A DNA stretch of 64,000 bases from Paragordius varius. Lineage: Eukaryota > Animalia > Nematomorpha. Shown in pieces: positions 3,001 to 36,531 of this stretch (positions are counted from its first letter, which is position 1; each line of letters starts with the position of its first letter). Made by a program: the position numbers and the translations under genes. Under the pieces are notes generated by a model. It saw nothing but the letters and a program-made list of their open reading frames with translations. It was not told where the DNA came from and made no database searches. The stretch lies in the NCBI GenBank assembly GCA_964247055.1, contig OZ176056.1, positions 1,984,001 through 2,048,000 of the forward strand, read 5' to 3'.

Positions 3001-6000
3001 TTAAAGTATTATTGTGTACATCCACTCATCACCGAAGCCCCAATTCAGTAACAAGATAGATGGTGTTTTGGTTGTTAACGAGTTGAGAATTGATTGAAAA
3101 CAGATTTTGCCGCACGGCTTATTGTGAGACTTGGCTAACTTGAGTATACTGAAAGGACTAAACAGATTAAAGTATTATTGTGTACATCCACTCATCACCG
3201 AAGCCCCAATTCAGTAACAAGATAGACGGTATTCTGGTTGTTAACGAGTTGAGAATTGATATAAAACAGATTTTGCCGGACGGTTTATTGTAAAGACTTG
3301 GCTAACTTGAGTTTACTGTAAAGGACTAAACAGATTAAAGTATTATTGTGTACATCCACTCAGCACCAAAGCCCCAATTCAGTAACAAGATAGACGGTGT
3401 TTTGGTTGTTAACGAGTTGAGAATTGATTGAAAACAGATTTTGCCGGACGGTTTATTGTAAAGACTTGGCTAACTTGAGTTTACTGTAAAGGACTAAACA
3501 GATTAAAGTATTATTGTGTACATCCACTCATCACCGAAGCCCCAATTCAGTAACAAGATAGACGGTGTTTTGGTTGTTAACGAGTTGAGAATTGATAAAA
3601 ACAGATTTTGCCGGACGGTTTATTGTAAAGACTTGGCTAACTTGAGTTTACTGTAAAGGACTAAACAGATTAAAGTATTATTGTGTACATCCACTCATCA
3701 CCGAAGCCGCCATTCAGTAACAAGATAGATGGTGTTTTGGTTGTTAACGAGTTGAGAATTGATTGAAAACAGATTTTGCCGGACGGTTTATTGTAAAGAC
3801 TTGGCTAACTTGAGTTTACTGTAAAGGACTAAACAGATTAAAGTATTATTGTGTACATCCACTCATCACCGAAGCCCCAATTCAGTAACAAGATAGACGG
3901 TGTTTTGGTTGTTAACGAGTTGAGAATTGATTGAAAACAGATTTTTCCGGAAGGTTTATTGTAAAGACTTGGCTAACTTGAGTTTACTGTAAAGGACTAA
4001 ACAGATTAAAGTATTATTGTGTACATCCACTCATCACCGAAGCCCCAATTCAGTAACAAGATAGATGGTGTTTTGGTTGTTAACGAGTTGAGAATTGATT
4101 GAAAACAGATTTTGCCGGACGGTTTATTGTAAAGACTTGGCTAACTTGAGTTTACTGTAAAGGACTAAACAGATTAAAGTATTATTGTGTACATCCACTC
4201 ATCACCGAAGCCGCCATTCAGTAACAAGATAGATGGTGTTTTGGTTGACGAGTTGAGAATTGATTGAAAACAGATTTTGCCGGACGGTTTATTGTAAAGA
4301 CTTGGCTAACTTGAGTTTACTGTAAAGGACTAAACAGATTAAAGTATTATTGTGTACATCCACTCATCACCGAAGCCCCAATTCAGTAACAAGATAGACG
4401 GTGTTTTGGTTGACGAGTTGAGAATTGATTGAAAACAGATTTTGCCGGACGGTTTATTGTAAAGACTTGGCTAACTTCAGTTTACTGTGAAGGACTAAAC
4501 AGATTAAAGTATTATTGTGTACATCCACTCATCACCGAAGCCCCAATTCAGTAACAAGATAGACGGTGTTTTGGTTGTTAACGAGTTGAGAATTGATTGA
4601 AAACAGATTTTGCCGGACGGTTTATTGTAAAGACTTGGCTAACTTGATTTTACTGTAAAGGACTAAACAGATTAAAGTATTATTGTGTACATCCACTCAT
4701 CACCGAAGCCCCAATTCAGTAACAAGATAGACGGTGTTTTGGTTGTTAACGAGTTGAGAATTGATTGAAAACAGATTTTGCCGGACGGTTTATTGTAAAG
4801 ACTTGGCTAACTTGAGTTTACTGTAAAGGACTAAATAGATTAAAGTATTATTATGTACATACACTCATCACCGAAGCCCCAATTCAGGAACAAGATAGAC
4901 GGTGTTTTGGTTGACGAGTTGAGAATTGATTGAAAACAGATTTTGCCGGACGGTTTATTGTAAAGACTTGGCTAACTTGAGTTTACTGTAAAGGACTAAA
5001 CAGATTAAAGTATTATTGTGTACATCCACTCATCACCGAAGCCCCAATTCAGTAACAAGATAGACGGTGTTTTGGTTGTTAACGAGTTGAGAATTGATTG
5101 AAAACAGATTTTGCCGGACGGTTTATTGTAAAGACTTGGCTAACTTGAGTTTACTGTAAAGGACTAAACAGATTAAAGTTATATTGTGTACATCCACTCA
5201 TCACCGAAGCCGCCATTCAGTAACAAGATCGATGGTGTTTTGGTTGTTAACGAGTTGAGAATTGATTGAAAACAGATTTTGCCGGACGGTTTATTGTAAA
5301 GACTTGGCTAACTTGAGTTTACTGTAAAGGACTAAACAGATTAAAGTATTATTGTATACATCCACTCATCACCGAAGCCCCAATTCAGTAACAAGATAGA
5401 TGGTGTTTTGGTTGTTAACGAGTTGAGAATTGATTGAAAACAGATTTTGCCGGACGGTTTATTGTGAGACTTGGCTAACTTGAGTTTACTGCAAAGGACT
5501 AAACAGATTAAAGTATTATTGTGTACATCCACTCATCACCGAAGCCCCAATTCAGTAACAAGATAGATGGTGTTTTGGTTGTTAACGAGTTGAGAATTGA
5601 TTGAAAACAGATTTTGCCGGACGGTTTATTGTAAAGACTTGGCTAACTTGAGTTTACTGTAAAGGACTAAACAGATTAAAGTATTATTGTGTACATCCAC
5701 TCATCACCGAAGCCCCAATTCAGTAACAAGATAGATGGTGTTTTGGTTGTTAACGAGTTGAGAATTGATTGAAAACAGATTTTGCCGCACGGCTTATTGT
5801 GAGACTTGGCTAACTTGAGTATACTGAAAGGACTATACAGATTAAAGTATTATTGTGTACATCCACTCATCACCGAAGCCCCAATTCAGTAACAAGATAG
5901 ATGGTGTTTTGGTTGTTAACGAGTTGAGAATTGATTGAAAACAGATTTTGCCGGACGGTTTATTGTAAAGACTTGGCTAACTTGAGTTTACTGTAAAGGA

Positions 6001-9000
6001 CTAAACAGATTAAAGTATTATTGTGTACATCCACTCATCACCGAAGCCCCAATTCAGTAACAAGATAGACGGTGTTTTGGTTGTTAACGAGTTGAGAATT
6101 GATAAAAACAGATTTTGCCGGACGGTTTATTGTAAAGACTTGGCTAACTTGAGTTTACTGTAAAGGACTAAACAGATTAAAGTATTATTGTGTACATCCA
6201 CTCATCACCGAAGCCCCAATTCAGTAACAAGATAGACGGTGTTTTGGTTGTTAACGAGTTGAGAATTGATATAAAACAGATTTTGCCGGACGGTTTATTG
6301 TAAAGACTTGGCTAACTTGAATTTACTGTAAAGGACTAAACAGATTAAAGTATTATTGTGTACATCCACTCATCACCGAAGCCCCAATTCAGTAACAAGA
6401 TAGACGGTGTTTTGGTTGTTAACGAGTTGAGAATTGATTGAAAACAGATTTTGCCGGACGGTTTATTGTAAAGACTTGGCTAACTTGAGTTTACTGTAAA
6501 GGACTAAACAGATTCAAGTATTATTGTGTACATCCACTCATCATTGAAGCCCCAATTCAGTAACAAGATAGACGGTGTTTTGGTTGTTAACGAGTTGAGA
6601 ATTGATTGAAAACAGATTTTGCCGGACGGTTTATTGTAAAGACTTGGCTAACTTGAGTTTACTGTAAAGGACTAAACAGATTCAAGTATTATTGTGTACA
6701 TCCACTCATCATTGAAGCCCCAATTCAGTAACAAGATAGACGGTGTTTTGGTTGTTAACGAGTTGAGAATTGATTGAAAACAGATTTTGCCGGACGGTTT
6801 ATTGTAAAGACTTGGCTAACTTGAGTATACTGAAAGGACTAAACAGATTAAAGTATTATTGTGTACATCCACTCATCACCGAAGCCCCAATTCAGTAACA
6901 AGATAGATGGTGTTTTGGTTGTTAACGAGTTGAGAATTGATTGAAAACAGATTTTGCCGGACGGTTTATTGTAAAGACTTGGCTAACTTGAGTTTACTGT
7001 AAAGGACTAAACAGATTAAAGTATTATTGTGTACATCCACTCATCACCGAAGCCCCAATTCAGTAACAAGATAGACGGTGTTTTGGTTGTTAACGAGTTG
7101 AGAATTGATATAAAACAGATTTTGCCGGACGGTTTATTGTAAAGACTTGGCTAACTTGAGTTTACTGTAAAGGACTAAACAGATTAAAGTATTATTGTGT
7201 ACATCCACTCATCACCGAAGCCCCAATTCAGTAACAAGATAGATGGTGTTTTGGTTGTTAACGAGTTGAGAATTGATTGAAAACAGATTTTGCCGGACGG
7301 TTTATTGTAAAGACTTGGCTAACTTGAGTTTACTGTAAAGGACTAAACAGATTCAAGTATTATTGTGTACATCCACTCATCATTGAAGCCCCAATTCAGT
7401 AACAAGATAGACGGTGTTTTGGTTGTTAACGAGTTGAGAATTGATTGAAAACAGATTTTGCCGGACGGTTTATTGTAAAGACTTGGCTAACTTGAGTTTA
7501 CTGTAAAGAACTAAACAGATTAAAGTATTATTGTGTATATCCACTCATCACCGAAGCCCCAATTCAGTAACAAGATAGACGGTGTTTTGGTTGTTAACGA
7601 GTTGAGAATTGATATAAAACAGATTTTGCCGGACGGTTTATTGTAAAGACTTGGCTAACTTGAGTATACTGAAAGGACTAAACAGATTAAAGTATTATTG
7701 TGTACATCCACTCATCACCGAAGCCGCCATTCAGTAACAAGATAGATGGTGTTTTGGTTGACGAGTTGAGAATTGATTGAAAACAGATTTTGCCGGACGG
7801 TTTATTGTAAAGACTTGGCTAACTTGAGTTTACTGTAAAGGACTAAACAGATTAAAGTATTATTGTGTACATCCACTCATCACCGAAGCCCCAATTCAGT
7901 AACAAGATAGATGGTGTTTTGGTTGTTAACGAGTAGAGAATTGATTGAAAACAGATTTTACCGCACGGCTTATTGTGAGACTTGGCTAACTTGAGTTTAC
8001 TGTAAAGGACTAAACAGATTAAAGTATTTGTGTACATCCACTCATCACCGAAGCCCCAATTCAGTAACAAGATAGATGGTGTTTTGGTTGTTAACGAGTT
8101 GAGAATTGATTGAAAACAGATTTTGCCGGACGGTTTATTGTAAAGACTTGGCTAACTTGAGTTTACTGTAAAGGACTAAACAGATTAAAGTATTATTGTG
8201 TACATCCACTCATCACCGAAGCCCCACAGTAACAAGATAGACGGTGTTTTGGTTGTTAACGAGTTGAGAATTGATATAAAACAGATTTTGCCGGACGGTT
8301 TATTGTAAAGACTTGGCTAACTTGAGTTTACTGTAAAGGACTAAACAGATTAAAGTATTATTGTGTACATCCACTCATCACCGAAGCCCCAATTCAGTAA
8401 CAAGATAGACGGTGTTTTGGTTGTTAACGAGTTGAGAATTGATTGAAAACAGATTTTGCCGGACGGTTTATTGTAAAGACTTGGCTAACTTGAGTTTACT
8501 GTAAAGGACTAAACAGATTAAAGTATTATTGTGTACATCCACTCATCACCGAAGCCCCAATTCAGTAACAAGATAGATGGTGTTTTGGTTGTTAACGAGT
8601 TGAGAATTGATTGACAGATTTTGCCGGACGGTTTATTGTAAAGACTTGGCTAACTTGAGTTTACTGTAAAGGACTAAACAGATTAACTTTTATTTGTACA
8701 TTCACTCATCACCGAAGCCCCAATTCAGTAACAAGATAGATGGTGTTTTAGTTGTTAACGAGCTGAGAATTGATATAAAACAGATTTTGCCGGAATGTTT
8801 ATTGTAAAGACTTGGCTAACTTGAGTATACTGAAAGGACTAAACAGATTAAAGTATTATTGTGTACATCCACTCATCACCGAAGCCGCCATTCAGTAACA
8901 AGATAGATGGTGTTTTGGTTGACGAGTTGAGAATTGATTGAAAACAGATTTTGCCGGACGGTTTATTGTAAAGACTTGGCTAACTTGAGTTTACTGTAAA

Positions 9001-10400
9001 GGACTAAACAGATTAAAGTATTATTGTGTACATCCACTCATCACCGAAGCCCCAATTCAGTAACAAGATAGATGGTGTTTTGGTTGTTAACGAGTAGAGA
9101 ATTGATTGAAAACAGATTTTACCGCACGGCTTATTGTGAGACTTGGCTAACTTGAGTTTACTGTAAAGGACTAAACAGATTAAAGTATTATTGTGTACAT
9201 CCACTCATCACCGAAGCCCCAATTCAGTAACAAGATAGACGGTGTTTTGGTTGTTAACGAGTTGAGAATTGATTGAAAACAGATTTTGCCGGACGGTTTA
9301 TTGTAAAGACTTGGCTAACTTGAGTTTACTGTAAAGGACTAAACAGATTAAAGTATTATTGTGTACATCCACTCATCACCGAAGCCCCAATTCAGTAACA
9401 AGATAGATGGTGTTTTGGTTGTTAACGAGTAGAGAATTGATTGAAAACAGATTTTACCGCACGGCTTATTGTGAGACTTGGCTAACTTGAGTTTACTGTA
9501 AAGGATTAAACAGATTAAAGTATTTGTGTACATCCACTCATCACCGAAGCCCCAATTCAGTAACAAGATAGATGGTGTTTTGGTTGTTAACGAGTTGAGA
9601 ATTGATTGAAAACAGATTTTGCCGGACGGTTTATTGTAAAGACTTGGCTAACTTGAGTTTACTGTAAAGGACTAAACAGATTAAAGTATTATTGTGTACA
9701 TCCACTCATCACCGAAGCCCCACAGTAACAAGATAGACGGTGTTTTGGTTGTTAACGAGTTGAGAATTGATATAAAACAGATTTTGCCGGACGGTTTATT
9801 GTAAAGACTTGGCTAACTTGAGTTTACTGTAAAGGACTAAACAGATTAAAGTATTATTGTGTACATCCACTCATCACCGAAGCCCCAATTCAGTAACAAG
9901 ATAGACGGTGTTTTGGTTGTTAACGAGTTGAGAATTGATTGAAAACAGATTTTGCCGGACGGTTTATTGTAAAGACTTGGCTAACTTGAGTTTACTGTAA
10001 AGGACTAAACAGATTAAAGTATTATTGTGTACATCCACTCATCACCGAAGCCCCAATTCAGTAACAAGATAGATGGTGTTTTGGTTGTTAACGAGTTAAG
10101 AATTGATTGACAGATTTTGCCGGACGGTTTATTGTAAAGACTTGGCTAACTTGAGTTTACTGTAAAGGACTAAACAGATTAACTTTTATTTGTACATTCA
10201 CTCATCACCGAAGCCCCAATTCAGTAACAAGATAGATGGTGTTTTAGTTGTTAACGAGCTGAGAATTGATTGAAAACAGATTTTGCCGGACGGTTTAGTG
10301 TAAGATTTGGCTAACTTGAGTTTACTGTAAAGGACCAAATAGGTTACCGTTTTATTGTTTTTTACCACCACTCATCACCGAATCCACCGATTTTCAAAAC
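1..10400. repeat. Tandem satellite array, ~168-bp monomer, ~62 copies, running off the window start
   Basis: Unit tgtacatccactcatcaccgaagccccaattcagtaacaagatag...aaaggactaaacagattaaagtattattg (168 bp, 62 G+C = 37%) repeats head-to-tail with scattered variants. The last monomer (~10,300-10,410) is divergent. Confidence 0.98.
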
Positions 10401-10874: not shown

Positions 10875-11039
10875 AAGTTTTGATATAAACCGACCTCCAC
10901 AATCTGCTTGCAATTTACTCGTATAAGACAACCTTAAACATCAATATTGTTACTGAAAATTGGCGGCTTCAGTAATCAGTGGTTGTAAAACACAATAACA
11001 CGATAATCTGTGTAGACCGTTACAGTAAAATCAAGTTAG
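10875..11039 (-). repeat. Single diverged, inverted copy of the satellite monomer
   Basis: The reverse complement ctaacttgattttactgtaacggtctacacagattatcgtgttattgtgttttacaaccactgattactgaagccgccaattttcagtaac...aagcagattgtggaggtcggttta aligns over a full monomer length. Confidence 0.9.
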
Positions 11040-11437
11040 ATTCCTATCCGTAGGTTAGTGATAATAAAATTCCTAAATTTGATATTGATTAATGTATTAA
11101 CAAGTCATCTTCTAATATATCTCAAATTGAAATGGGTTCAATAAATTAGATGACGGATAAATATTGAAACATCGGAGAAAGATCTTTTATCAACAAAAGC
11201 GTAATGTAGAATATTAAGCAAACAAAACCCCAACACATTCGATTAGGTATATATTTATATCTATTAGCCATAATAACTAAAATTTATTTGTAGTTTCCAG
11301 GATATACTATAGATAGATTATTAAAAAAGGGGGTTAATCTGTATATCAAACATATCACATCGTAATTTAAACCATCGCCCGATAACCCATATTTATTTTA
11401 ATTATATAATAGTTTTTTCTAAAATTTAGTTTCATGA

Positions 11438-12724
11438 TTAGCAGTGATTCGTTTGAACATAAACACGATGTGAACTTGCTTCTGTGGATGCGGCATCTTG
11501 ATCTATAAAGACTGGTCTAACCACAATCTCGTATTCCGTTTCGGGCAAAACATATGGGAAGCGATAATTATCAGAAACCGCCTAAAAAAGAAATGCACAC
11601 ATTAGTTTTTATACAAATACATAAAATTTTTGGGTCGTACGAATATATATACAGAGAAATACAGTAAAAATTGATGCTTATACAGACAGAACATCTCTCA
11701 AAAAATTTTACAGTAAAAATTGGAATTATAGAGAGAACAGTAAAAATATAAAGACATATACTTTTTCAAGATAATCATACTATAAACCATTTACAGAAAT
11801 TATTTTATTACAATTGGAAATTAACGTAATTAATTGTATTACCAAAATAGATTTTTATTTCATACTCTGAAATTACAATATGAATAATATTTAAAAATAC
11901 GTTTTATAAATTACAGCAGACTTTGAAAAAATATTTGTCTTTATATTTTTACGTTCGTCCGTATAATTTCATGATTTACTGTAAAAATCATATAATATAC
12001 AGACAACTAGTTAAAAAACGTACTCGTCTGCCTTTATTATGATTCAAATATGACTCCTGTTAACCATATATACATTGTGATAAAGTCTTATATTTCGTCG
12101 TTTAAACAACCGAAGATATTTATAGTTTCAGATTTTGGGTAAAAAAGCTTGTCATAAATTTAAAATTATTAAAAATCTATCAAAAATATACCGAAATAAA
12201 TCCTCTTTTAGTTGGTAAATCTTTCCCTGGGCTACTCAAGAAAATTTCTAGGCCACGGATGTCTTTTGCTTTTTCAGGATAATTAATTAAGGGGTTGGCA
12301 AGAAAAACTAATAAATCTAAAGAATTTGTATTTCCAGCGGTTGTGCCATTTATTAGGGACACGCCTTTTATTTTGACCACCCATCTTGACAAATCTAAAA
12401 ATTTTAAACAATAAATTTAGAATATAAATATAAGTAAAAATAAAAACTTTAATATACTTTACCTTCCTGATTCAGAACATATTGACCTGCATCGTTAAGA
12501 TTAACTACACCATATATACATAAATAGATATAATATAATTAGAAAATGCAAATATTTCAATAACTTTATGATCAAAAACTAGTCTAATTTTAAATGCATT
12601 CATTACCTGATATAAGTTTAAAAGCTGAATATGCTCCGATAAGCGGTAGATTTTCATAAGCAGGTTGAACCTTAACCAAATACTCGGTGGAAAAAGTGAG
12701 TCCCTTGATTTCGAATTGAGTTTG
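11438..12724 (-). CDS. 3' exons of a fibronectin type III domain protein (5' part not found)
   Basis: GT-AG exons 12724-12607, 12504-12463, 12394-12192 and 11581-11438 join in frame: QTQFEIKGLTFSTEYLVKVQPAYEN...DIRGLEIFLSSPG...NYRFPYVLPETEYEIVVRPVF...TNHC*. Two L-x-x-x-T-E-Y-x-V/I-x-V motifs fit FN3 strands E-F. Confidence 0.7.
11709..11983. mobile_element. TA-CAGT MITE family (tacagtaaaaattg...ttttactgta)
   Basis: Imperfect TIRs; related copies at ~34,159-34,538 and ~45,150-45,434. Confidence 0.6.
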
Positions 12725-13082
12725 CTAATGCAAATTTTTTTAAAATTAAACAACCAAAATTTATTAGTTTGATTTAGAGTTTATTATTACTTGTCCTACA
12801 TTTCGCAAAGATAAATTAGGTAAGAAATAATTTAAATATAAATAATGGATATGTTTAAGTTACTGTAGCTCTAATTAAAGTAATTAAATTCATCATCATA
12901 TACCTTTAACATTTCAAATCCTCAAACAATTAAAAATACAAATCAGCCTTGAACAATTCAAATTAACACTATATATCAATTATGTGTTTCCGGGGTAATA
13001 TATTAATATTATATATATTGTTTACCATATTCATATTTTTTATCAGTTTTATGTTAATTTTAATAAAATTTTTAGTTTTAGA

Positions 13083-13129
<47 letters not shown>

Positions 13130-13340
13130 CGATAATTTTTAACATCAAAAATGTAAATTCATAATGTTTAAATTTGAAGTGTAAATGGATATAATTCAAT
13201 TTATGTTATATTATAAATAATGTAGGAAAAAATAAAATTTAAAAAAGTATGGATGTTTTTTTATATAGAAAACATTTGCACTTTTGTAAAATTTATTTTT
13301 AAATAAATATTTGAAATAAAAAAAATGAAATTAATTATAC

Positions 13341-16300
13341 CTATAACAACTCTAAATTTGGTACCGCCCACTTCCTCCTTAACATAGCTATTAAAGGATT
13401 GATTATTGAGATTGAACAATAAACTTCCATCACTTAATCTAAAATAATTTAAGTAATAAAAATAAATTTATAAAAAGACATTAAATATTTTTATAAACAC
13501 CATATTTTTTAATCCTTGATTATATAACTAAAATTATGGTTTGTGAAATAAGTAAATTCTCAAATTCCTTAAATTATCTATAAACTATTCAAAAGTGTTA
13601 TCATTTATACGCTTAAAAAAATATTATTTTTTACGATAAAAAATACTAAATTTTAAACAACAATGTAAATATTATAAAAATTTTACCTAAGGGCATCAAT
13701 TTCGATAAAACTGCCATTCATAAGCAAAAAATAACTGTTTGGTCCAGTTTTAGTTACCTAAAGGAATATATTTAAGGGTAAAATTAAAATATTTTTCCAA
13801 AAATAAAATATTAAAATTAATTTATTTTTAACCAAAAATCATAAATAATAAAATTTTTTATTTGAGAAATTAATTTAATACACATTTAGGTTCGCGGGAA
13901 AATTTCTAACAGCTCGCCTAAAAGATAAAATTTTAAATATGCTAAACAACTTTTTACACATACGTGTTCACTTAATTTTATGAATTCGCCTATCAATCGA
14001 CTTAAAGTGTTTAAATTAAATCTAATAATATTTAAATCTCTTTTAAAATTAACGGTTCCAATCAAAATGTTGGTTCAAAGATTAAAAATTAATTTAAATT
14101 GCTTCTATGAGCGAAATATTATGTATAGCCGAATAAAAATTACTCACTAAGATAAATCTTATTTAAAGGATATATCCTTATGTACAGTATGCATTTTAAT
14201 GGTTGCTTAACAGTATAAAAACGAGGCATTTGTAACACAGGAGTGTACAAAAAAAACAACAAAATATATTAAATTAACATTTTTTTCCTTTCTTTACCCT
14301 TACACAACTAACTGTGTCGCAAATTTCCCAACTCAATAGTGTGAATTAAGCAACCATTAATATGCTATATTGATATTTATTTAAAAAAAATTAATACGTC
14401 TTACCAATTAATAAATATGTCTTAAAGATCTAAATATTAATGCCCTTATTTCAAAAGCGACCCGCGGAGCCATTTTTGGCCTCTATTTTAACATTAAAAA
14501 TACCAAACAATTTTCATAATACTATAAAAAATCATTGCTAAAAAAATTAATTGACCAACTAACCTGCACACATATTTAACGTCTTTGTGTATTAAATCAA
14601 CCAAAAGAATGTCAATTAATACGCGCGGTTAAAAAGTTTTGTTTGTTAATACTTAAAAAACATCTAAAACTTATTACATTTTTATTCCAAAAACCAACTA
14701 ATTAATTAACTAACTAAACAAACTGACCTGAACACTATATTTAATGCCTTCACGTATTAAATCAACCGAAAGGGTGTGAATTAACGTGGTCGCAGGTAGG
14801 CATTGTCCACGGGCCAATGCATTTCGAAATCGATCAACGCTTGAACAAATTTTTTGATCAGCTATATGTATACTGGCACATATAACTCCAATCAAGGTAT
14901 CCGGTTTTTCAGACTAATTTAAAAGGTAAATTTTATAATTTTTATTTTTACGTTTAACAAAAATTACTTGTTCGAAATATCATAATAAATTTATATAATT
15001 TTTGCTGAATTATTGCATTTATAATATATAATAATGGGTAATTCTCTCATTTTGCTAATTATTAGGATAAATTGTATGAAAAAAATGTAAAAATATTTAT
15101 AATAAATTCCATAATATTAAAATGTTCTAATAGATTTCACTTTTTGAAAAGTAAAAAAATAATTAATTTAAAATTTTATCCAAATTATAACCTGAAAACT
15201 TTAAATATAGAAATTAATCATATGATTAGTTATGTGTATAACTCCAATCAAAGTATCAAAATTTTCGGACTAATGTTATATTATTGTTTGAAAGTTAAAA
15301 AATATATGTAAAATTTTAAATAAAATCATAATATATGTAAGATTTTCATAAAAATATTTAATTTTTTTAAAAATTATTTATTTTCTATAATTAGGGTAAA
15401 AGTTTTTTTTAAACCGTATATATGTGTAAATTTGTTTAATCATTTAAACATAGATCTAATCAAAACCGTTTAAACTATAAAAACGATATAAGATTTTGAA
15501 AAAAACCAAATCTTTAACTTTTTAATGTTATTATGGCCTTATTTATAATTATATGACGTTAAATCATTTTTAAAAGATCAAATAACCAAGAAGAATTTTA
15601 ATCCGTTACATCTAAAATTGGATTTTTGAGAATCAGTAAAAGTAAAAATATAAAACTTTATACACCTATAATAAATGGCCTCAAATATATAAATTTAAAT
15701 ATAATTTAGAAAATATTTAATACTTTAAATTTTTAAAATTGAATAGCAAATAAGCAAACAAAAAATTATAATTGTGTGACATAAAATCATTGCTATCCCT
15801 TTTCCATGCTTTGAAGGCGTCGTTTTTTTCTTTCGTAATCTCTTTTAATTCCTTTTTCCACCACCAATTTTTCTTTTTTTTATTGTATGGTTTGCATCTC
15901 CCACAAATATTATCTGCAGTTTTAACTATTGTTTTTAGGTCTCCCATCCTGAACCAATGGATTCACTGTTTTGTTAGAGCGCTTCGGATGCCTGGTTGAT
16001 GTATTTGTTCCTGATTGTTTGATTTTGTAGTTTATTGTGGTTGATTTTGGCTGGTCTTTGGAAAGGAATTAAAAGAGGTTACTAAAGAAAAAAACGACGC
16101 CTTCAAAGCATGGAAAAGGGATAGCAATGATAACAGACAAACATATCTGATCCCAACACACAAAGCGCAGAAAGAAATTAGAAAAACTTTAAATAAAAAT
16201 TGCTTAAAACTGGCCACTAAACTAGAGGACCAGGTTAAAAATAAAAAAATCTTTAAATACATAAAGAATATAAACTCAAACAAACAAGATATTATTAAAT

Positions 16301-19300
16301 CCAAATGCATAAAAAACAATATGAAGGAAATAATCTCTAACCCAGAAAGTGTAATTAAGATCAATTTAAAAATCCCTCTAACACTAAAACCAGCCACGAG
16401 CGGACCCATCCACGAAATCACAGAAAACGAAGTATTAAAAGCAATACAAAAAATGAAGCCAAACAAGTCGTCAGGTGCCAGCGAACTATCAATCGATCTG
16501 CTTAAACCAATACCATGCTTAACATCCTACCTTACAACTTTTTTTAATGAAATTCTTACCAAACGTGAAATTCCCCATGACTGGAATAAAGGTATAACGA
16601 TCCCTATATATAAAAATAAGGGAAATCGTCTCGTCTGCTCCTCATACCGCCCCTTAAAACTTTTAGAACACACTTTCAAAATATTTGAAAGCATCATTGA
16701 CAACCGCCTTAGACATACCATTACAATAACAAATAATCAGTTTGCATTTCGTAAAGAACACAGCACTACAGATGCTATCTTCATAATCAGGCAACTACAG
16801 GAAAAATACCTTTCAAAAAATCAAAAACTTTTCCACATATTTCTAGACCTGGAGAAAGCTTTTGATAATATCCCTAGGGCAACAATCAAATGGGCCCTAA
16901 GTCAAAATTACATCGAAGAATATTTAATAGAAATAATATTACTTCTTTATGAAAATACAACCACAATGGTACGCACGCAAATAGGAGACACGGAACCTTT
17001 CAAGACAAACACTGGCCTACACCAAGGGTCTGTACTTAGTCCATTACTATTCATTATAATATTAGACTGTATCACAAAAAACATATCTACCCAACCGCCC
17101 TGGGAGTTAATCTTCGCGGATGACATTGTTCTAACAGATATTTCAATTGAAAATATGTCAAACAAATTCAGAACATGGAAAATCTGTCTAGAGAATAAAA
17201 ATAAATATTAATAAAACAAAAATAATGATATCAGGAGATCGTACGCACCGCCCCAAATATCCATGCGCTATCTGCGCCAAAGAAGTCAAAACAAATTCAA
17301 TAAAATGCAACAAATGCAAATTCTGGGTTCACAAAAAATGCTCCAAAATCACCGGCAAACTCAACGAACAAATAAACTTTAAATGTAACAACTGTAAAAA
17401 CAATAATACAACTCAAACACGCTCGACATATATGACAATCGACGAAAACTCAATAGAAAAAGTAGACCAGTTTACATACCTAGGAGACGTCATCGACTCT
17501 AAAGGCCATATAACTGGAGCAATAAGGAAACGAATCCAACAAGCATGGGGTAAAATTAACTCTCTCTAAAATTTGTCCTTAAAAATGAAAATGTATCTAA
17601 CAATAATAAATGGCTAATATACAAAGCAGGAGTCAGGCCAGCTCTTACTTACGCCACCGAAACATGGCCCCTAAATAAATCAAATCTTGACAAAATGATA
17701 AATACGGAAAACAAAATAATTAAAGCTTGCTGTTCTGACTACAATATTCATCTTAAACACAAAAATGACACAGTAGAAAAGTTTAAACAAAGAAGCATGC
17801 TTAAATACTTGGGTCACATTAAAAGAAGACAAACCGACCACCCACTCCAAACCATTAAACACATACAACCCTTTGGAAACAACCGCAAAGGGCGCCCAAC
17901 ACATTCCTGGAGCGACAACATTAAAAATGACATAAAAATACTAAACCTCGACATTACCAAATGTCTAGATAAGGACCTTTGGAATAAGACCGTTCACGAA
18001 AACCTTCAAACATGAAGTCAAAAAGCCATCAAGTAAGTGTGACATAAAATAAAATACTTGAAATTTTTCAGCAATGAGTTTATCCAACCATTCCGTGTCA
18101 AAATTATTTTTTTGGAAGCTTTCCGTTTCCAACAAAGTTATAAGGTATTCAACAGTAGTTCTAAAATCACCCTTAATCGATAATTCTTTAAGGCCAACAA
18201 CCAAATTCCTAAATAAATTACAAGTTAAGTGAAAAATAGGTAAATTATTTAAAATTAAATTGGAAATGTGAAACCATTTAATATTAAAATTAAATTTTTT
18301 TTAAAAATAATTTTCGTAAATAGAAATAGTATAAGGTTAAAAGAATATATATGGTATAAACCAGTGGCAAAGAATTGGGAAATCAATAATTTCCAAAAAT
18401 ATGCTCGCAAAAATCTTCGTAAAATTAATTTTCTTACACAATTTCTCTAAGTGACACTCTACTTATTAGCAAGAAAAAATAAAAAAATGATATATTGTGT
18501 TTACATTTTACAGTCCTGAGTATAAATTCGATAGATTACTTATGAATATGCCCATATATATATTTATATATATATTTGATGCGACCACAAAATTTTTTTT
18601 GAGTTAAAAATGCGTGCGAAGCCATTTATGATGGACACGCCGCTATAAACCACGTTGTAAAAAATTAAAAAAAATTGAATAAATATATATTATTATTCGT
18701 CGATTCAATTGGTTATAATAAACCAACAAATATATACCATTTGCAATTCAAAACACCCTCGAAAATTTACAACCCCGAACAATTCAAATTCAACCTAAAA
18801 CTATGTGTTTTCGGGTTAAATATATCTCATCATTAATAGGAAATATATCTTAATGGCATAGTTTATTATTTATTCATTATTATTTAAATTTTATACGAAA
18901 TTTCAATACAAAAATATTAGTAATTTTAATCTGAATAAACACTTAATTAATTTCAGGGTGAATTTGAATTGTTAAAGGTTTGAACTATAAATGTATTCAT
19001 CATCTATAAAAAACCCAAAATGCTAAATTTTAAATTTATTATTATTTTTAATAAATTTTGCTATTTTGAATATAAATTACTATATATATATATATATATA
19101 TACATTATTAGGTTAAATATCTTTTATTTTTTCAAAAAAACTCCAAAATTTTCATAAATTATAACTCTTGAACATTTTTTTTTCAAAAGTTTCTAAAGTT
19201 AAAATGGATTTAAAAGATAGAAGTTTCAAAAAATAGATTTAAAAGCTACTGTCTAGCTTCATCACGGTTTTCACCCCACGAAAAGCAATGTCCAAACTGC

Positions 19301-21027
19301 GAATCAGCAAATTCATGCAAACCGCCCGAAGCCCCAACACTAAAATATCCCCAAATATTTTTGTTACTCCGGAAATTTAGTTCCTAAAAAACGAAAATAA
19401 AGTAAAGTATGTATGTTAAAATAAATAATAATTGATTATTGTTTACGCTGAAGTGTGATTGTATTATTATAATGCAATTATGATTCAGCTAAAATTATAT
19501 GAATTTATTATGAATTTTCGATTACTACAAGTTTAGTTTATATTTTAATTATGTTTTACGTTTGACAAATTACTTGCAGTAATCGAAAATTCAATAAATT
19601 CATATAATTTAAGGTGAAATATTATTGCAATATATTAAATAAATAATTGATTATATCAAGTTTAAAATGAATAATTAAAAGATAACTCTGTATTAAACTA
19701 ATCGCTTTTCAACCTCAAAAATCACAATATTACAAATCAATCATAAAAACCTTAAAATCATCAAATATTTAACAAAAAATTTTCAAAAAAGTCACTTGAA
19801 TTTGCCCCGACGTTGGTTTAAATCCTTCGTCAGGATTTTCACTCGTTATCCTACAAGCTATGACATGTCCCCGGGGTCGCGGTTTATATTGAGAATCTAC
19901 GCTGGCTGCTGACAAGATTGAATATCCATCAGTAACGGAATTATTTAAGCGTTGATTTCGAAACAAAATATTTTCTAGCGCATTTTCGTTTTCATTAATA
20001 AAATTTTCAGATATTTCAGTTTTTTGGCTTGAAATTTGCATTTCATCATTTTGGTTTGTAAAGGGAGTTTCCGTAACAGTTTGTTTTATTATGGCATTTG
20101 TATTATTAGTTATGGGTACTAAAAACACCATAAAAGATTAATAATAAAATAGCATTTAAGAATGAATCTAAGCAAATTTTTTGTTATAGCAAATTATATG
20201 TATTTCCTAAATTTTTTGAATATATTACACATGGTTTCAAGCGTTCAAAATCTATATCATTAAATAAAAACTAATTTACAATTCAAAATAAGATGGATAT
20301 ATCTAAAAAAGTATTTTTTCTCTAGATTTTGATTGGTTATAAAAATAATTTATATTATAAAAAATTATTATAAAATTATTTTATAACTATATAAAAACCG
20401 GCAAAAATTTCTATATCATTTTTCCAAATAATTATTGGAAATAAATTTATTACTGGTCAAAAATAAAAAATTATCATAAAAATATATACTTTGAAGAGGT
20501 GTTTCCACCATAAACCAAGGAGATAAACCCATATAAACTCGAATATCTTTTATACGGTAAAGTGGTAAGCCCATAGCAATCTAAAAAAATAAAATTTAAA
20601 CAAATTAAGAGTAATATTTTGCTTGTTAAAGGACAAAATTATGGCATATGTATTTTATTTTGTTGTTATGTTGTAATATATCGACTTTACAATTAAAATA
20701 TTAATTTTAGCAAAAGTTATAATCACAATTATAATATATATATATAGTATTTTTTATAAATTATCAAACTAATTTATATTTTATGTATTGAACACTACCC
20801 GCTCAATAGATTTCTTTTATGATTATTACATTGACATAATATTGTACTGTAAAATTTATTAAGCGTATTACAAAGTTTTTGACCCAGTAGGATAATTCGC
20901 AATTAAGAGAAGTATTTTTTGTGATAAAGCGAAACTTTTGGCTTTAATTTAAATTTGCCCCTTATCACATAACTTACATTAATAAAAAGTTCAATTTTCA
21001 AAAAAATCAAAAACTTATTTTTCCAAA

Positions 21028-21069
<42 letters not shown>

Positions 21070-24000
21070 AATTAAGTTGACAAGCTTCATTAAACTTATA
21101 TTTGAAAAATTTTGCGTCAATAATCCATGTCATAAAAAACTTCAAAAATATATTAACTAATTTAAATTCCAAATCTAAAAGACTTTAAATAATCTTTATA
21201 ACTCTTTGAGTTGTTGAGAAATTAGATTTTCCGAGTTTTTAGATAATCTGAGATTACTCAGATATATGACATACAAACAAAACATATACCTGTAATTGAC
21301 AAGCCGGTAAATTAATGTCGCAAATCATTTCTGTACATGGGTGTTCAACTTGAAGTCTGGGATTTAGTTCCAAAAAGCAAAAAGTGCCCTTCGCCGTATC
21401 ATACAAGTATTCAACAGTTCCTGCACTAACGTAGCCAACCATACGGGCTAATCTTACAGCGGCCTACATACATATAAAAAGAGTTTTTTTCTATTCACAT
21501 CTCATTAAATTTGTCAATTAAATTGTGGACAAATTTTGTTTTATCTTATATGCTACAGCAACAATTATGTGAATTGGACAACACAAATGTTACTCTATAT
21601 ATACATGGTTGGTTCAAATATTTGGGTATAATAAAAGAGTATTTAAGGTTTTTTTAATTTTCCTAAAATAAATGTAGCTACTGAGTCTAAAACAGCTTAA
21701 AATCCAAATTGTTGGATAATAAAGTTTGCATTATTCTGATAAAAACGAACGATTCTGTAAATTTGGCTGTGAAGATAAACACATACATTGATAAGGCAAG
21801 TTTTTAATGTTATAAGCTATATCAACTTAAATCTTGATAATTATAAAAAGCACCAAAAAGTATTACCTTTTCGCTAGCTCACAAGAAACTTACACTTTTT
21901 GGTGTTTTTAAAAATAATATCATATTGACCAAATATTAGAACATATCTATCATTTAATTTTCAAATTTTAACAAAATTCAATTACCTAGTACCTTTTAAT
22001 AGTCCCCAAAACCAAAAAACTCTAAAACTTTAAAATCAAACCTTTTCCATTTCTTCAATGACGTGGGCGGTTGCTATGGTAACGGGTGCTTCCTCAATAA
22101 TCTTTTGATGACGTCTTTGAATGGAACAATCTCGACCAAAGAGAGAAATAGCTGTTCCATAACTATCAGCCAGTAGTTGAACTTCCAAATGCCGACAATG
22201 GCTAGCCAGGGCCATCAAGAAAATGGGGGATCCTGGGACTTCAGTTTGAACCTTTTAGTACATAGCATTATAAAATTTTGTTTAGTAAGGATTAAAAAAA
22301 TTAAAAAACTGATAAAACAGGCTACCATATTTTGCCATAATTTTTTTAAAAAACTTATCATTTTGTGTTATATAACAAGCGATAGAAACGTAAAGTGATA
22401 TCACATTTAATCATACAAAATCACAATTATTTAGATTATGTAGTAGGAAATATCAAAATGTTTAAAAATTATTAGTCATTATATTTTTAGCCATATTTCA
22501 GATAATAAATTCCTGAAAAGATCTGTAAAAATTATTAGCCATTCACTTTTTTTAACCTTTTTTGGAGATACGACTTTTGTAAAACCTATTTATATTTACA
22601 ATTTAAATTTTAAAAAGTATTTTTTGCCGAAAATAAAACCCAAAAATTGATACCTGTTTAAAAGCTATTGGAAAATCTTCAGGTTTTAATACTTTACGTA
22701 TTCCTTTCCCTCCACCACCTTCGGAAGCTTTTATCATAATAGGGTATCCAATTTTTTTGCTCATCTGAAAAAAATTTTTTTTGTTCAAAATATAAAAAAT
22801 TAAATATAAATTCCATAATTTGATTTAAACTTTTACTATTTTTTTTATGATTATTATATAATATATGTAATTTTGAGTTGCGAAGTAAAAGATAATTGGT
22901 AATTATATAATTTAAAATTTCTCTCAATTATGCAGGTTATAAAGCTAAAATCAAAATATGAATATAGTTTTATACATGAAAAAATATTATTTTTCATTTG
23001 TTTATAAACATCATAACTCAAATATCAACTATATATATTATTTGACTAAATTTTGACAAAACCTTCAAAAAATTATTATTTTATAAAATTATGAAATTTA
23101 ATTAAAACACCCTTAAAACACAAAAAAACTCGAAAAAAAATCTATATAAACTTGTAATCCTTGTTCACAGTTTGAGATACAAGCCGATTCATATATTTCA
23201 GTTGGGATCAAGTTATTTAAATTATCTAAATCATAATAAGTTGCGGCGTTTTGCGATGCTGAAGTAGAAACACTATTTCCTACATTGGTTATTTGTTTGG
23301 TTGTTGAAACACTAATACTTTTAGTCATGAGGGATTGATTAGCAAAATGTTCGGCATTTATACTTTGTTGTAGGGAGCGACTTTTGACCTCTAAATTTTC
23401 AATCTCTATGCCTGCATTTAAGTTTCGATAATAAAATTAGTTCAATAAAAAAACGGACAAAATGTACAAAAAAATAAAATTCTTTTTAAAAGGTCCGTTA
23501 TATTGTTACTTTCCACATAAACTGAATTAAAATTTAAAATTATGTAATTGAGTTAAATAACAATAAACTTTGCGACCTGCGACCCAAAACAATAAATTAT
23601 ATTTAAAAATCATGGTTCAAAAAATATTGTCTTTTAAAATAAGATTTGATGCTTTTTAATTTTAACATTTTGTCTATATAATTTCAATTTTTATTGTAAA
23701 TTAATTAAAAAACGAAATTTCTTATAGGTTTTGGTTAGTGCTAAATGTTGCATAAATATTTTAGTAAATATTAATTATTTTTTAAAAAATGTTTTTGAGA
23801 ATCCCGCTATTAAAAATGAAGAGTGTTAATATATAAATAATTATTAAAGTTTGCAACATTAAAATTATAAAAGATCACCATAATTATATTTCAATATTTA
23901 TTATAATTCAACCATATATTGTACATTGTTCTATGCTTTAAAATTTTTACAAGCAAAATATTTTAAATATATTTAATGCAAAGCGAATTTTGAAAAAAAT

Positions 24001-25941: not shown

Positions 25942-27023
25942 AAATTTGATTATAATAATTTAAAGCGAAAAAACACGCGTTTTTACGTGATTGTATGATA
26001 TTGAAGCTGTGCCAATTTATTATACGAGAACAAGGGTACTATTGTTCAGCTCAAAATTATTTTTGTAGGTCTTACTTATGATTTATTTATAAAGTATAAA
26101 ATACTATACTGTTGCAAAAGACTAGCTAAATAAAAATTAATTGATCGAGAGTTCTCCCAATGGTATCCAAATCTTAAAACACGTATTCTATGGCTTTGGT
26201 GCAGTGTGCGAAAATATATTTAAAACTGTATGATTTAAAAAAATATATTTAAAGCTATTTTTTTGGTGTATATTTTTAAAAAAATTAAAATATACCATAT
26301 ATTTCCATTTTAACACTTTATAACTTTTTGAGGGGGTGTTACAACCAAGTGCCCCTTAAAATATCATAAAAAATTTTTAACGTTAGGCTAAATTTAATGA
26401 TATTAAAATATAATAAAAATGCCTGTAAACTTTTTGATAATTTTGTTTTATATCGCAAATGCAACAGGCAAATAAATCCATCATTATGAAAAAGCTTTCG
26501 GATTATAGAAATTTATGATATTTATCTAATATCAGCTACTTGCTTCAATCAAGTTTTGGAGTTATCCGTTAGAATTAAAAATGTTAACTAATAATTATAA
26601 ATATTTTTATCTAAAAGACATATTGAAAAACAAATTTCAGCCAAACTGATTTTGAAACAGTAGGATGTTACTAAAAGCTCTGATTAGGAAACCCCCTCAA
26701 CATGCCATCTCAGATAATGTAATAAATTGTTGACTATTTAATTAGTTTTTGAGTGAGTCGTTGGTTGTATGAAATTAAAAGTTAAGCTAGAATTTATAAA
26801 ATATAATCTAATAAATTTAAAATTAATTTTTGTTTTATGGTTCTGACGTACAAATACTCCAAAATATTTTTATCTATTCCACGTGCATAAAATGAAAGAC
26901 ATGTTTATTTATTGAGGAAACATTTAAAGATTAGCGGTTTTTATATTGAAGAATGTTTGAAAAAATAAAAAAGATAAAAGGGGAGTTAAATGGCCAAACT
27001 AAAATTATGTTTATATTTTAAAT

Positions 27024-27247
27024 CAGGGGTGTCTAAAGCAAATATTTCGCGAGCCGCATTTAAAATATATATGGCCATTTATAAATAAAATATTAAATTT
27101 CAAACGTAAAAAATTTTTTCTAGTTTTTACAAATCGGGTAGATTTATATGTAGAAATATTGTTTTAAAATTAATTTTAATAATGTGAGCAAATGTTTCCA
27201 ATTATGATTTTCCGAATATTTCGCGAGCCGCCTGTTGGATAACCCTA
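27024..27247. mobile_element. hAT-type MITE
   Basis: TIR caggggtgtctaa / ttggataacccta; near-TSD ttttaaat / gcttaaat (8 bp). Confidence 0.6.
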
Positions 27248-27539
27248 GCTTAAATCAATTATTTTCATGCATGTTATGTGCCGTTTCGAAAAGAATTTAT
27301 AACCATCTATTTTTTTATAAGACCAATGCAGTTTCTGTTTTTAATTGTATTTTACAGGTTCTAATATTAACTAAAAGTTACTTCTAAACGATTAGTCTGC
27401 TTTATTTTTCCCTTCAATTTTCGAAATATAAACAATCAAATTTATTTATTGGATAAACAAATTAGTGAATTTACTACACTATTACATCTATAATATTTTT
27501 ATGGAAAATCTTTCAAAAATATTATATATGACAAATAAA

Positions 27540-35702: not shown

Positions 35703-36531
35703 CTAATTTAAATCAATGATAAAATAAAATTAGAATAAATTTTTAGGACAAAACTCTTCGAATTCACACAAAATTTTTAAATAACTGGCGTAATTATTCT
35801 TTTATAAGCTTAAATAATGATGTTATCCTTAAAATCATGTTTTATCCAGGGGGTTATCTTGCACCGCAATCCTTTAAAACATTTTTGTAAATTATTATCA
35901 ATTAAATATGAAATATAATAAATGGTGCCCATAAAATCTTTAAATGTTGATATTTATTTTATTAAAATTTTCTGGATAAATTGTGCCAAATGGTGAATAA
36001 TTAGTATATATATATATGAACGCGATTACAGTCGTGTATCCTTTATTTTATCAAAAATTTATTTTTTTTCGTTAAATGGTTATAAATATTTGGTAAAGAA
36101 TGGAAAAACAAGAGCTCTATGGTAATTCTTATACTTTTTTGATGAATATATATTGTTAATACCATAGAGCTCTTGTTTTTTCCATTCTTCTTTTTTATGA
36201 TCGGCTGCAGGCGCGGAGAAGAACTTGGTATGTTCACTCCTGAGATGCGCGTACCTTTTGATTTTATAGGAAATCTTGTTCACATTCGGTGATAAACGGA
36301 ATTTATCTCATTATCTTCATCAATTTATTGTCACTTTTATTATCCGGAAGAAATTCTATCACTCAGCATTATAATCTCACATGAATTATTTCTACAGAAC
36401 ATACAACTCCAAAATTTTCATCGACAATTTCATTCCCTAAAAACCATTCTTACACATCAGTGGACATATCATACTGATTCTTTCTATTTATTACTATATC
36501 TCAATACACCACCACTAAACTAAATTCCTAC

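What the first reader, a model, noticed from the sequence alone, without database searches (positions are those of the whole stretch)
11438..13438. ACC stops just before its biotin-carrier domain and abuts the 3' end of an FN3 gene: chimera, giant satellite intron or misassembly
Seen: the last ACC exon ends ...KFRVVI-g (phase 1) at 13,341. Canonical ACC continues GNKTCVFEKENDP...EVMKM plus the central and carboxyltransferase domains, and none of this is recognisable between 13,340 and the satellite. Instead, FN3 exons lacking a 5' end follow on the same strand within ~600 bp, with a half MITE (~12,900-12,968) in between. Splicing from 13,341 to the phase-1 acceptor at 12,504 gives an in-frame biotin carboxylase-FN3 fusion ending at 11,438; splicing to 12,724 is out of frame and stops early. 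The 14 ACC exons carry no stops or frameshifts. Inference, three options: a truncated or chimeric duplicate under constraint; ACC continuing across the >10 kb satellite as a giant intron; or an assembly join.
Basis: partly seen in the sequence, partly recalled or inferred. Interest (0 to 1): 0.75.

Follow-up and report, generated by a model that had tools for sequence, protein, structure and literature searches.

The report
Truncated ACC gene copy, amplified, conserved
This stretch is the seam of an old duplication that joined the first third of the fatty-acid enzyme gene acetyl-CoA carboxylase (ACC) to the tail of another gene; the unit was copied about 13 times among satellite DNA, and the enzyme-derived part still evolves like a working gene.

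Summary
The last ACC exon ends at 13,341 in phase 1, just before the biotin-carrier (BCCP) domain. Nothing further of ACC lies in the window. Four exons from the 3' end of another gene follow on the same strand.

This is a real duplication junction, not a misassembly or a giant intron. The same junction occurs in two other diverged copies. The only BCCP, central and carboxyltransferase (CT) exons in the 110-Mb genome belong to a full-length parent ACC about 216 kb away on the same contig.

The contig holds 13 truncated copies in three structural types. Twelve were examined, and each has the 168-bp satellite about 1 kb beyond its tail.

On the ACC side the break lies at the outer end of a MITE in intron 14. 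About 95 bp of filler follows. The tail comes from a paralogue at C7:0.79 Mb.

The ACC exons are under strong purifying selection:
- dN/dS is about 0.05, also between copies.
- The window has 13 synonymous and 0 non-synonymous private changes.
- Against its sister copy, exons 9-14 show 17 synonymous and 0 non-synonymous differences.
- Only in-frame indels occur, and splice sites and promoter are conserved.

The borrowed tail is relaxed. Expression is untested. The "FN3" label is unverified. The scan had already noted sister copies in other windows.

The parts
13..10382 (.). 168-bp satellite array on the 3' side of the unit
   Evidence: TRF reports period 168, 62 copies, 96% matches. The same array lies about 1 kb beyond the tail exon in every copy examined.
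10885..11039 (-). Isolated inverted satellite-like monomer in the 3' flank of the tail gene
   Evidence: 75% identical to the array monomer. It is present in every copy. Monomers 72-78% identical to the satellite also lie 370-520 bp 3' of the stop codon of the tail-gene paralogues at C7:9.33 and 9.52 Mb.
11423..12798 (-). Block derived from the 3' end of another gene (the 'FN3-like' gene), holding exons F4 11581-11438, F3 12394-12192, F2 12504-12463 and F1 12724-12607
   Evidence: 78-83% identical to paralogues at C7:9.33 and 9.52 Mb. 88-93% identical to a longer paralogue at C7:0.789 Mb that continues upstream past position 12,798. Splice sites are conserved. dN/dS among copies is 0.2-0.9.
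11706..11986 (.). MITE inserted in the F3-F4 intron after the tail gene diverged from the 9.3/9.5-Mb paralogues
   Evidence: 64-nt inverted arms. Many dispersed copies on both strands. Absent from the 9.33 and 9.52 Mb paralogues, present in the 0.789 Mb paralogue and in every examined copy.
12799..12895 (.). Junction filler of unknown origin
   Evidence: No similarity to the ACC parent, to the tail-gene paralogues or to any fetched locus. Kept in the copies at 1.38 and 2.06 Mb.
12896..13190 (.). MITE in ACC intron 14; the ACC-side breakpoint lies at or within its outer end (12,896-12,952)
   Evidence: Collinearity with parent C7:1,781,428 onward stops at 12,952 by BLAST. In alignment A1 it runs to the terminal inverted repeat at about 12,896, and the same element is in the parent's intron.
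13341..13438 (-). ACC exon 14, the last ACC exon of this copy, ending in phase 1
   Evidence: Aligns to human ACC1 residues 709-735. 100% identical to the copies at 1.38 and 2.06 Mb, 87.5% identical in nucleotides to the parent with one amino-acid change.
13687..14913 (-). ACC exons 13 (13757-13687) and 12 (14913-14728), the start of the BT domain
   Evidence: ACCA_BT E = 1.7e-11. This exon occurs only four times in the genome: window, two copies and parent.
15753..18045 (+). Non-LTR retrotransposon fragment inserted in intron 11, 13 nt after the exon 11 donor
   Evidence: Absent from the parent. RVT_1 and PHD hits. Shared at 95.3% identity with the copy at C7:2.06 Mb, which marks the two as sister copies.
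18058..25941 (-). ACC exons 11 to 1: N-terminus and the complete biotin carboxylase (BC) domain
   Evidence: Biotin_carb_N, CPSase_L_D2 and Biotin_carb_C hits on single exons. Exon map. Selection statistics.
25942..26330 (-). Promoter-proximal and 5' UTR region duplicated with the gene
   Evidence: 90-96% identical to the parent and to two copies, against 67-84% for most introns.
26316..48900 (.). Remainder of the duplicated unit, upstream of ACC, interrupted by transposon insertions
   Evidence: Collinear with parent C7:1,796,850-1,800,000 and C7:1,813,741-1,817,628. 98% identical over 4 kb to the unit at C7:1.87 Mb.
50787..64000 (.). 168-bp satellite array bounding the unit on the other side
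   Evidence: TRF reports period 167, 79 copies.

Best explanation
SHOWN.
- Window 11,438-13,438 is the junction of an old segmental duplication.
- A block of about 36 kb from the full-length ACC locus (C7:1.781-1.818 Mb) was joined to the last four exons and 3' flank of another gene.
- The ACC block carries upstream DNA, the promoter and exons 1-14, that is, the whole BC domain and most of the BT domain. It ends at a MITE in intron 14. About 95 bp of filler lies at the join.
- The closest relative of the tail gene sits at C7:0.79 Mb.
- The 168-bp satellite resembles a sequence in the 3' flank of the tail gene's paralogues.
- The twelve examined copies each have satellite about 1 kb beyond the tail. 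The contig holds 13 truncated copies in two oppositely oriented arrays.
- Two deletion variants carry a junction region that is 97-100% identical wherever it occurs. One lost exons 12-14 and F1. The other also lost exons 6-10.
- The ACC-derived exons, splice sites and promoter are held by strong purifying selection in most copies, this one included.

INFERRED.
- The satellite grew out of that 3'-flank sequence, and unequal exchange between flanking arrays amplified the unit.
- The deletion variants arose once each and spread later.
- The copies are transcribed from the duplicated ACC promoter.
- They make a BC-BT protein of about 790 residues that lacks the biotin carrier and the carboxyltransferase, so it cannot be an ACC enzyme.
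- The borrowed exons mainly supply a 3' end. The tail is 129 residues here if exon 14 splices to F2.
- The likeliest role is binding or modulating full-length ACC through its BC domain.
For: Structure:
- Collinearity with the parent locus is shown.
- ACC_central, the ACC copy of Carboxyl_trans and ACC's Biotin_lipoyl exon occur only at the parent. Parent exon 15 reads GNKTCVF...MEVMKM.
- Biotin_carb_N exons of this ACC occur at 14 places on C7.
- The junction is replicated at C7:1.395 and 2.056 Mb.
- Satellite lies next to the tail of every examined copy, and proto-monomers lie beside the tail-gene paralogues.

Selection:
- All 78 pairwise dN/dS values are 0.01-0.19, including copy against copy, with dS 0.07-0.24.
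- Variable sites are almost all at third codon positions: exon 7 has 18 of 18, exon 3 has 27 of 30.
- Copy-private changes are 68 synonymous to 27 non-synonymous, against 22% synonymous expected if neutral (p = 8e-25). The window has 13 to 0.
- Non-synonymous changes cluster in the two lineage-specific insert regions of exons 4 and 9.
- The window and its sister copy share a retrotransposon insertion that has diverged by 4.7%. In exons 9-14 they differ at 17 synonymous and 0 non-synonymous sites. About 37 non-synonymous differences would be expected if neutral.
- Indels in ACC exons are all multiples of three, while intron lengths differ by hundreds of bases.
- GT/AG sites are kept, and the promoter region is 90-96% identical.
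Against: - No RNA or protein data exist for any copy.
- The tail is used inconsistently. Exon 14 to F2 is in frame here and in one other copy. The nearer acceptor, F1, gives an early stop. The sister copy has lost F1-F3 and would end 3 codons into F4. The exon 11 type is in frame only with F4.
- Tail exons show dN/dS of 0.2-0.9, and two copies have frameshifts there.
- Two copies carry stop codons in ACC exons.
- Four copies lack the ATP-grasp core yet share the conserved 5' exons. However, that deletion tract is 97-100% identical among them and so looks recent.
- Identity between copies is mosaic, 67-98%. Sequence exchange is therefore active, and an indirect explanation is possible.
- From my own knowledge, isolated eukaryotic BC domains are reported to be monomeric and inactive, so a catalytic role is unlikely.
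Confidence: 0.6

Rival explanations
1. The copies are unused duplicates. Their coding-like evolution is indirect. Frequent gene conversion among the copies and with the essential parent ACC means a damaging change in a copy can be pasted into the parent and is then removed by selection. Alternatively, copies are repeatedly overwritten from the parent.
For: - Identity is strongly mosaic. Some tracts are 92-98% identical between copies or to the parent, while neighbouring introns are 67-80%.
- Variable sites fail a simple tree pattern, with many incompatible splits.
- Synonymous distance to the parent (0.13-0.21) is hardly larger than between copies.
- Tandem copies of the exon 12 edge sit in intron 12. 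Earlier notes on this genome (s1-257456, s1-252849) read similar arrays as exchanging sequence with the real exon.
Against: - Copy-private changes are still 72% synonymous.
- The young sister pair shows 17 synonymous to 0 non-synonymous differences.
- Selection acting on only 1 of 14 family members should give a much weaker bias than the parent's own lineage shows (23 to 5). The three exon-14-type copies show 27 to 3.
- Overwriting from the parent would also erase synonymous differences.
- Deletion alleles, which would be lethal if pasted into the parent, have nevertheless spread.
Confidence: 0.25
2. The copy is a neutral, decaying pseudogene that happens to look intact.
For: - It is truncated and lies in satellite-rich DNA.
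- A retrotransposon sits in intron 11.
- Two sister copies carry stop codons.
Against: - Introns have diverged by 16-33%, yet there are no frameshifts in 2.4 kb of coding sequence in any of 12 copies.
- dN/dS is about 0.05, and the excess of synonymous private changes has p = 8e-25.
Confidence: 0.04
3. The truncated copies are alternative 5' cassettes. Exon 14 (phase 1) splices across a giant intron to the parent's exon 15 (also phase 1), 216 kb downstream on the same strand.
For: - The window copy and the other copies of its array lie upstream of the parent in the same orientation.
- The phases match.
- It would explain the constraint.
Against: - The path crosses three other units with their own splice sites and tail exons, plus several satellite arrays.
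- The five copies of the other array face the opposite way and are equally constrained.
- The deletion types cannot join in frame by this route without skipping their own exons.
Confidence: 0.03
4. The junction is an assembly join between unrelated reads.
For: It lies between long satellite arrays, where assemblies are weakest.
Against: - The identical junction, with filler and MITE, occurs in two other copies at 95-98% identity, one of them in inverted orientation 600 kb away.
- A second junction type is shared by nine copies.
Confidence: 0.01

Closest known systems
Eukaryotic multidomain acetyl-CoA carboxylase (human ACC1/ACC2, yeast Acc1)
   Same: The N-terminus, the complete BC domain (Biotin_carb_N, ATP-grasp, Biotin_carb_C) and the first roughly 110 positions of the BT domain are present. 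The catalytic exons are identical or nearly identical in protein sequence to this genome's own full-length ACC.
   Different: It lacks the BCCP domain with the biotinyl-lysine motif, the central domain and the CT domain. It therefore cannot make malonyl-CoA.
Sdic of Drosophila melanogaster (from my own knowledge): a chimeric gene made from duplicated pieces of two neighbouring genes and repeated in tandem
   Same: It is a chimera of the 5' part of one gene and part of another. It was made by segmental duplication and then amplified in tandem on the same chromosome. The coding sequence is maintained.
   Different: Here the parental promoter is kept. The units are separated by satellite arrays of 10-20 kb. 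The copies are old (dS about 0.15-0.2). Expression is unknown.
Stellate / Su(Ste) arrays of Drosophila (from my own knowledge): amplified derivatives of a casein kinase 2 beta-subunit gene in repeat-rich DNA
   Same: It is a multi-copy derivative of a housekeeping enzyme gene, arranged in arrays associated with repeats, and the arrays occur in both orientations.
   Different: There is no evidence here of sex linkage, small-RNA silencing or genetic conflict. The copies retain introns and the parental gene structure.
Bacterial and plastid AccC, the free-standing biotin carboxylase subunit
   Same: It is a BC-only polypeptide without carrier or transferase.
   Different: AccC works with separate BCCP and CT subunits. 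No separate ACC-type partners were found in this genome. The only other carrier and transferase hits lie in other carboxylase genes. This protein is a recent fragment of the animal-type fused enzyme.

Membership tests
Acetyl-CoA carboxylase (functional multidomain enzyme) | Biotin carboxylase domain | tested here: met
   Single exons hit PF00289, PF02786 and PF02785. Protein sequence is identical or nearly identical to the parent in the catalytic exons.
Acetyl-CoA carboxylase (functional multidomain enzyme) | BCCP domain with the biotinyl-lysine (MKM) motif | tested here: not met
   ACC's PF00364 exon occurs only at C7:1,780,426-1,780,563 in the parent, where it reads ...MEVMKM.... Nothing like it lies in the window.
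Acetyl-CoA carboxylase (functional multidomain enzyme) | ACC central domain and carboxyltransferase domain | tested here: not met
   PF08326 occurs only at C7:1.7676-1.7779 Mb. PF01039 occurs only at C7:1.7545-1.7613 Mb and in an unrelated gene on C5.
Unprocessed pseudogene | Disabling mutations and neutral substitution pattern (dN/dS near 1) | tested here: not met
   No stop or frameshift in the 14 exons. dN/dS is 0.01-0.09 against the other copies. Private changes are 13 synonymous to 0 non-synonymous.
Chimeric, tandemly amplified gene family (Sdic/Stellate kind) | Junction joining parts of two identifiable parent genes | tested here: met
   The ACC parent is at C7:1.78 Mb and the tail-gene paralogue at C7:0.789 Mb. 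Breakpoints are at 12,896-12,952 and 12,798.
Chimeric, tandemly amplified gene family (Sdic/Stellate kind) | Several copies in arrays | tested here: met
   13 truncated copies on C7 between 0.74 and 2.14 Mb.
Chimeric, tandemly amplified gene family (Sdic/Stellate kind) | Transcription and translation of the chimera | not testable with these tools
   No RNA or proteome data were available. Only indirect support exists: conserved promoter, conserved splice sites and low dN/dS.
   Exons F1, F3 and F4 searched singly gave no Pfam hit at E up to 1. The Atlas gave no usable hit.

The most novel reading that the evidence does not exclude
The animal maintains about ten separately conserved genes for a BC-BT fragment of ACC. 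The fragment has no biotin carrier and no transferase. It would have a new, non-catalytic job, for example pairing with the BC domain of full-length ACC to tune or block fatty-acid synthesis, or soaking up a BC-binding inhibitor.

The family would have been built and multiplied by a satellite that arose from the flank of the donor gene.

A still more radical reading, which I put at about 0.07: in this genome unused exon copies in general are kept coding-like by an exon-directed correction process. The exon-edge arrays in introns would fit that.
Probability: 0.4. Interest if true: 0.75.

Novelty: new member of a known kind. Interest (0 to 1): 0.6.

Why it matters
ACC is the committed step of fatty-acid synthesis and is a drug and pesticide target. 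Its BC domain must pair up for the enzyme to work. I know of no description of a conserved, multi-copy BC-only derivative in an animal, and two full-text searches found none. If it exists it would point to an unrecognised way of regulating or protecting this enzyme.

The locus is also an unusually readable case of three things:
- how a chimeric gene is born, with both parents, both breakpoints and the filler identified;
- how a satellite can arise from a gene's flank;
- how satellite arrays then amplify and reshuffle a 40-kb gene-bearing unit.

Finally, it gives a clean test of whether coding-like evolution of duplicates reflects use or gene conversion.

Tried and rejected
- Giant intron across the adjacent satellite. 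Rejected because no exon 15 or later exon exists anywhere except in the parent.
- Misassembly. Rejected because the junction is replicated.
- Third-position hypermutation as the cause of the synonymous excess. Rejected because intron divergence (16-33%) is at least as large as dS.
- The C7:9.33 and 9.52 Mb genes as donors of the tail. Replaced by the closer paralogue at C7:0.789 Mb.
- The exon-11-type junction as ancestral. Rejected because the window type keeps more of both parents, and the other junction is nearly identical in all nine carriers.
- Confirming the FN3 label. Pfam on single exons, the Atlas and ORFs upstream of the tail-gene paralogues gave nothing.
Exons 1-3 of four copies and the copy at 0.74 Mb were therefore not examined.
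I redid the check by reference.
- Literature searches for truncated BC-only ACC duplicates found nothing relevant.
- The large representative-protein search was not run.
Full report
SETTING

The window is C7:1,984,001-2,048,000 of a 110.6-Mb, 44-contig, very AT-rich animal genome. About 40 kb of unique DNA (10.4-50.8 kb) lies between two arrays of a 168-bp satellite. ACC runs on the minus strand from 25,941 to 13,341.

I compared stop-to-stop translations of the window with the parent locus and read the exon edges. This gave 14 ACC exons with canonical splice sites and a consistent chain of phases.
- Single-exon Pfam scans place exon 3 in Biotin_carb_N, exons 6-7 in the ATP-grasp, exons 9-11 in Biotin_carb_C, and exon 12 in the BT domain.
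- Exon 14 (13,438-13,341) aligns to human ACC1 residues 709-735 and ends in phase 1.
- Four exons of another gene follow 617 bp downstream on the same strand.
- By phase arithmetic, exon 14 to F2 (12,504) is in frame and gives 789 codons plus a 129-residue tail ending at 11,438. Exon 14 to F1 (12,724) stops after 17 codons.
Frame continuity rests on phases only, and all searches were done exon by exon by reference.

WHERE THE REST OF ACC IS

Genome-wide profile searches locate the missing parts.
- ACC_central occurs once, at C7:1.7676-1.7779 Mb.
- The ACC carboxyltransferase is at C7:1.7545-1.7613 Mb.
- ACC's biotinyl exon is at C7:1,780,426-1,780,563. There it reads GNKTCVF...MEVMKM directly after the parent's exon 14.
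- So a full-length parent ACC lies at C7:1.754-1.794 Mb, on the same strand, 216 kb from the window copy.
- Window 12,952 to at least 29,121 is collinear with parent 1,781,428 to 1,800,000. Window 44.7-48.9 kb matches parent-side 1.8137-1.8176 Mb.
- About 36 kb was therefore duplicated, including the promoter and upstream DNA.

A FAMILY, NOT A SINGLETON

The Biotin_carb_N exon of this ACC occurs at 14 places on C7.
- Five copies lie on the plus strand at 1.24-1.39 Mb.
- The parent and seven copies lie on the minus strand at 1.79-2.14 Mb.
- One further copy lies at 0.74 Mb.

Mapping the window's exons onto the twelve loci I could fetch shows three structural types.
- Exons 1-14 plus tail: the window, the copy at 1.38 Mb, and the copy at 2.06 Mb, which has lost F1-F3.
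- Exons 1-11 plus F2-F4: five copies.
- Exons 1-5, exon 11 and F2-F4: four copies.

The BT exon occurs only four times in the genome, so the census of the first type is complete. Each examined copy has the satellite about 1 kb beyond its tail.

ANATOMY OF THE JUNCTION
- On the ACC side, collinearity with the parent runs into a MITE of about 295 bp. The MITE is present at the same spot in the parent's intron 14. Collinearity stops at or within the MITE's outer end, at 12,896-12,952.
- About 95 bp of filler with no match follows (12,799-12,895).
- From 12,798 down to 11,423 the DNA matches the 3' end of another gene. It is 78-83% identical to paralogues at C7:9.33 and 9.52 Mb.
- It is 88-93% identical to a longer paralogue at C7:0.789 Mb. 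That paralogue shares the MITE insertion in the F3-F4 intron and continues upstream past the breakpoint. It is the likely donor.
- The whole junction, filler included, recurs at C7:1.395 Mb (98% over the 401-base core, inverted) and at C7:2.056 Mb. This excludes an assembly join.
- The exon-11-type junction joins about 370 nt of intron 11 to a point 13-15 nt before F2. It is identical in all nine carriers. The surrounding tract is 97-100% identical.
- Because the window type keeps more of both parents, it is the older form. The deletion forms spread later.

ORIGIN OF THE SATELLITE

Monomers 72-78% identical to the satellite lie 370-520 bp beyond the stop codon of the tail-gene paralogues at 9.33 and 9.52 Mb. 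One inverted monomer sits in the same relative place in every copy, at 10,885-11,039 in the window. I infer two things from this. The satellite grew from the flank of the donor gene. Unequal exchange between the flanking arrays then amplified the unit.

SELECTION

This is the unexpected part.
- Exons differ by 3-6% in nucleotides but hardly at all in protein.
- All 78 pairwise dN/dS values are 0.01-0.19, copy against copy as well as copy against parent, with dS 0.07-0.24.
- Variable sites are almost all at third positions.
- Changes private to one truncated copy are 68 synonymous to 27 non-synonymous, where 22% synonymous is expected (p = 8e-25). The window copy has 13 to 0.
- The two copies that carry stop codons have 9 to 14.
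- Non-synonymous changes cluster in the lineage-specific inserts of exons 4 and 9, as expected for a folded enzyme domain.
- Introns are 67-84% identical and differ in length by hundreds of bases. Even so, every indel in an ACC exon is a multiple of three.
- Splice sites are kept, and the 390 bp upstream of the start codon are 90-96% identical to the parent.

The cleanest test uses the window and the 2.06-Mb copy. They share a retrotransposon insertion in intron 11 that has since diverged by 4.7%. Over exons 9-14 they differ at 17 synonymous and 0 non-synonymous sites, where neutrality predicts about 37 non-synonymous.

The tail exons behave differently. Their dN/dS is 0.2-0.9, and two copies have frameshifts there. 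Their reading frame also differs between structural types. They look like a borrowed 3' end rather than a conserved domain.

INTERPRETATION

The simplest reading is a maintained family of BC-BT-only proteins expressed from the duplicated ACC promoter. I put this at about 0.6.

The main rival is indirect constraint through gene conversion with the essential parent. The mosaic identity supports it (67% to 98% between neighbouring tracts), as do the incompatible site patterns. I put it at about 0.25. Conversion does not easily explain private synonymous-only changes or constraint as strong as in the parent's own lineage.

Cis-splicing to the parent's exon 15 is possible by phase and orientation for the window's array. 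It is implausible over 216 kb containing three other units, and impossible for the opposite-strand array.

PRIOR NOTES

The scan had already flagged sister copies in other windows (s1-368172, s1-310112, s1-248926). One of those notes pointed out that the exon-11 type can splice in frame to the last exon, which I confirmed by phases.

This report adds:
- the census and structural types;
- both parent loci;
- the junction anatomy;
- the satellite's origin;
- the family-wide selection tests.

The species name in those notes (a horsehair worm) is unverified here. Two full-text searches found no description of BC-only ACC duplicates.

Noticed in passing
L024 (parent, C7:1,783,100-1,784,280); also the copies at C7:1.3928-1.3937 Mb and C7:2.0574-2.0584 Mb: Intron 12 of ACC holds 6-7 tandem copies of the last 45-60 nt of exon 12 together with its donor site, 85-98% identical to the real exon edge. 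The window copy has lost them: its intron 12 is 970 nt against about 1,870 nt. This is the same oddity that other notes describe for SPT16 in this genome.
   Followed up: partly
window 25,787-25,812: The intron between ACC exons 1 and 2 is only 26 nt long (22 nt in the parent). This fits the ultra-short intron class noted elsewhere in this genome.
   Followed up: no
window 10,885-11,039; L040 (C7:9,338,230-9,339,071); L039 (C7:9,521,138-9,521,289): Single satellite-like monomers (72-78% identical to the 168-bp satellite) lie just 3' of the tail-gene paralogues that are not in the array. This suggests the satellite was born from that flank.
   Followed up: partly
window 15,753-18,045: A non-LTR retrotransposon fragment (RVT_1 followed by a PHD/C1-like zinc finger) is inserted 13 nt after the exon 11 donor, antisense to ACC. 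It is shared only with the copy at C7:2.06 Mb.
   Followed up: partly
window 36,190-39,400 and 40,580-44,750: Two transposon insertions interrupt the duplicated upstream region. The first has many copies at 93-97% identity on other contigs. The second has terminal repeats matched at 96-99% elsewhere.
   Followed up: no
C7:2,055,664/2,055,665 (L028, L044): The sister copy has a clean 659-bp deletion of F1-F3. One edge of the deletion coincides to the base with the filler/tail-gene boundary (window 12,797/12,798). That boundary may be a recombination-prone point.
   Followed up: no
window 29,000-32,958: This part of the unit, inside the micro-exon gene noted by others, is 98% identical to the unit at C7:1.872-1.876 Mb. 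That is far closer than the ACC introns of the same two units and is evidence of recent exchange between units.
   Followed up: no
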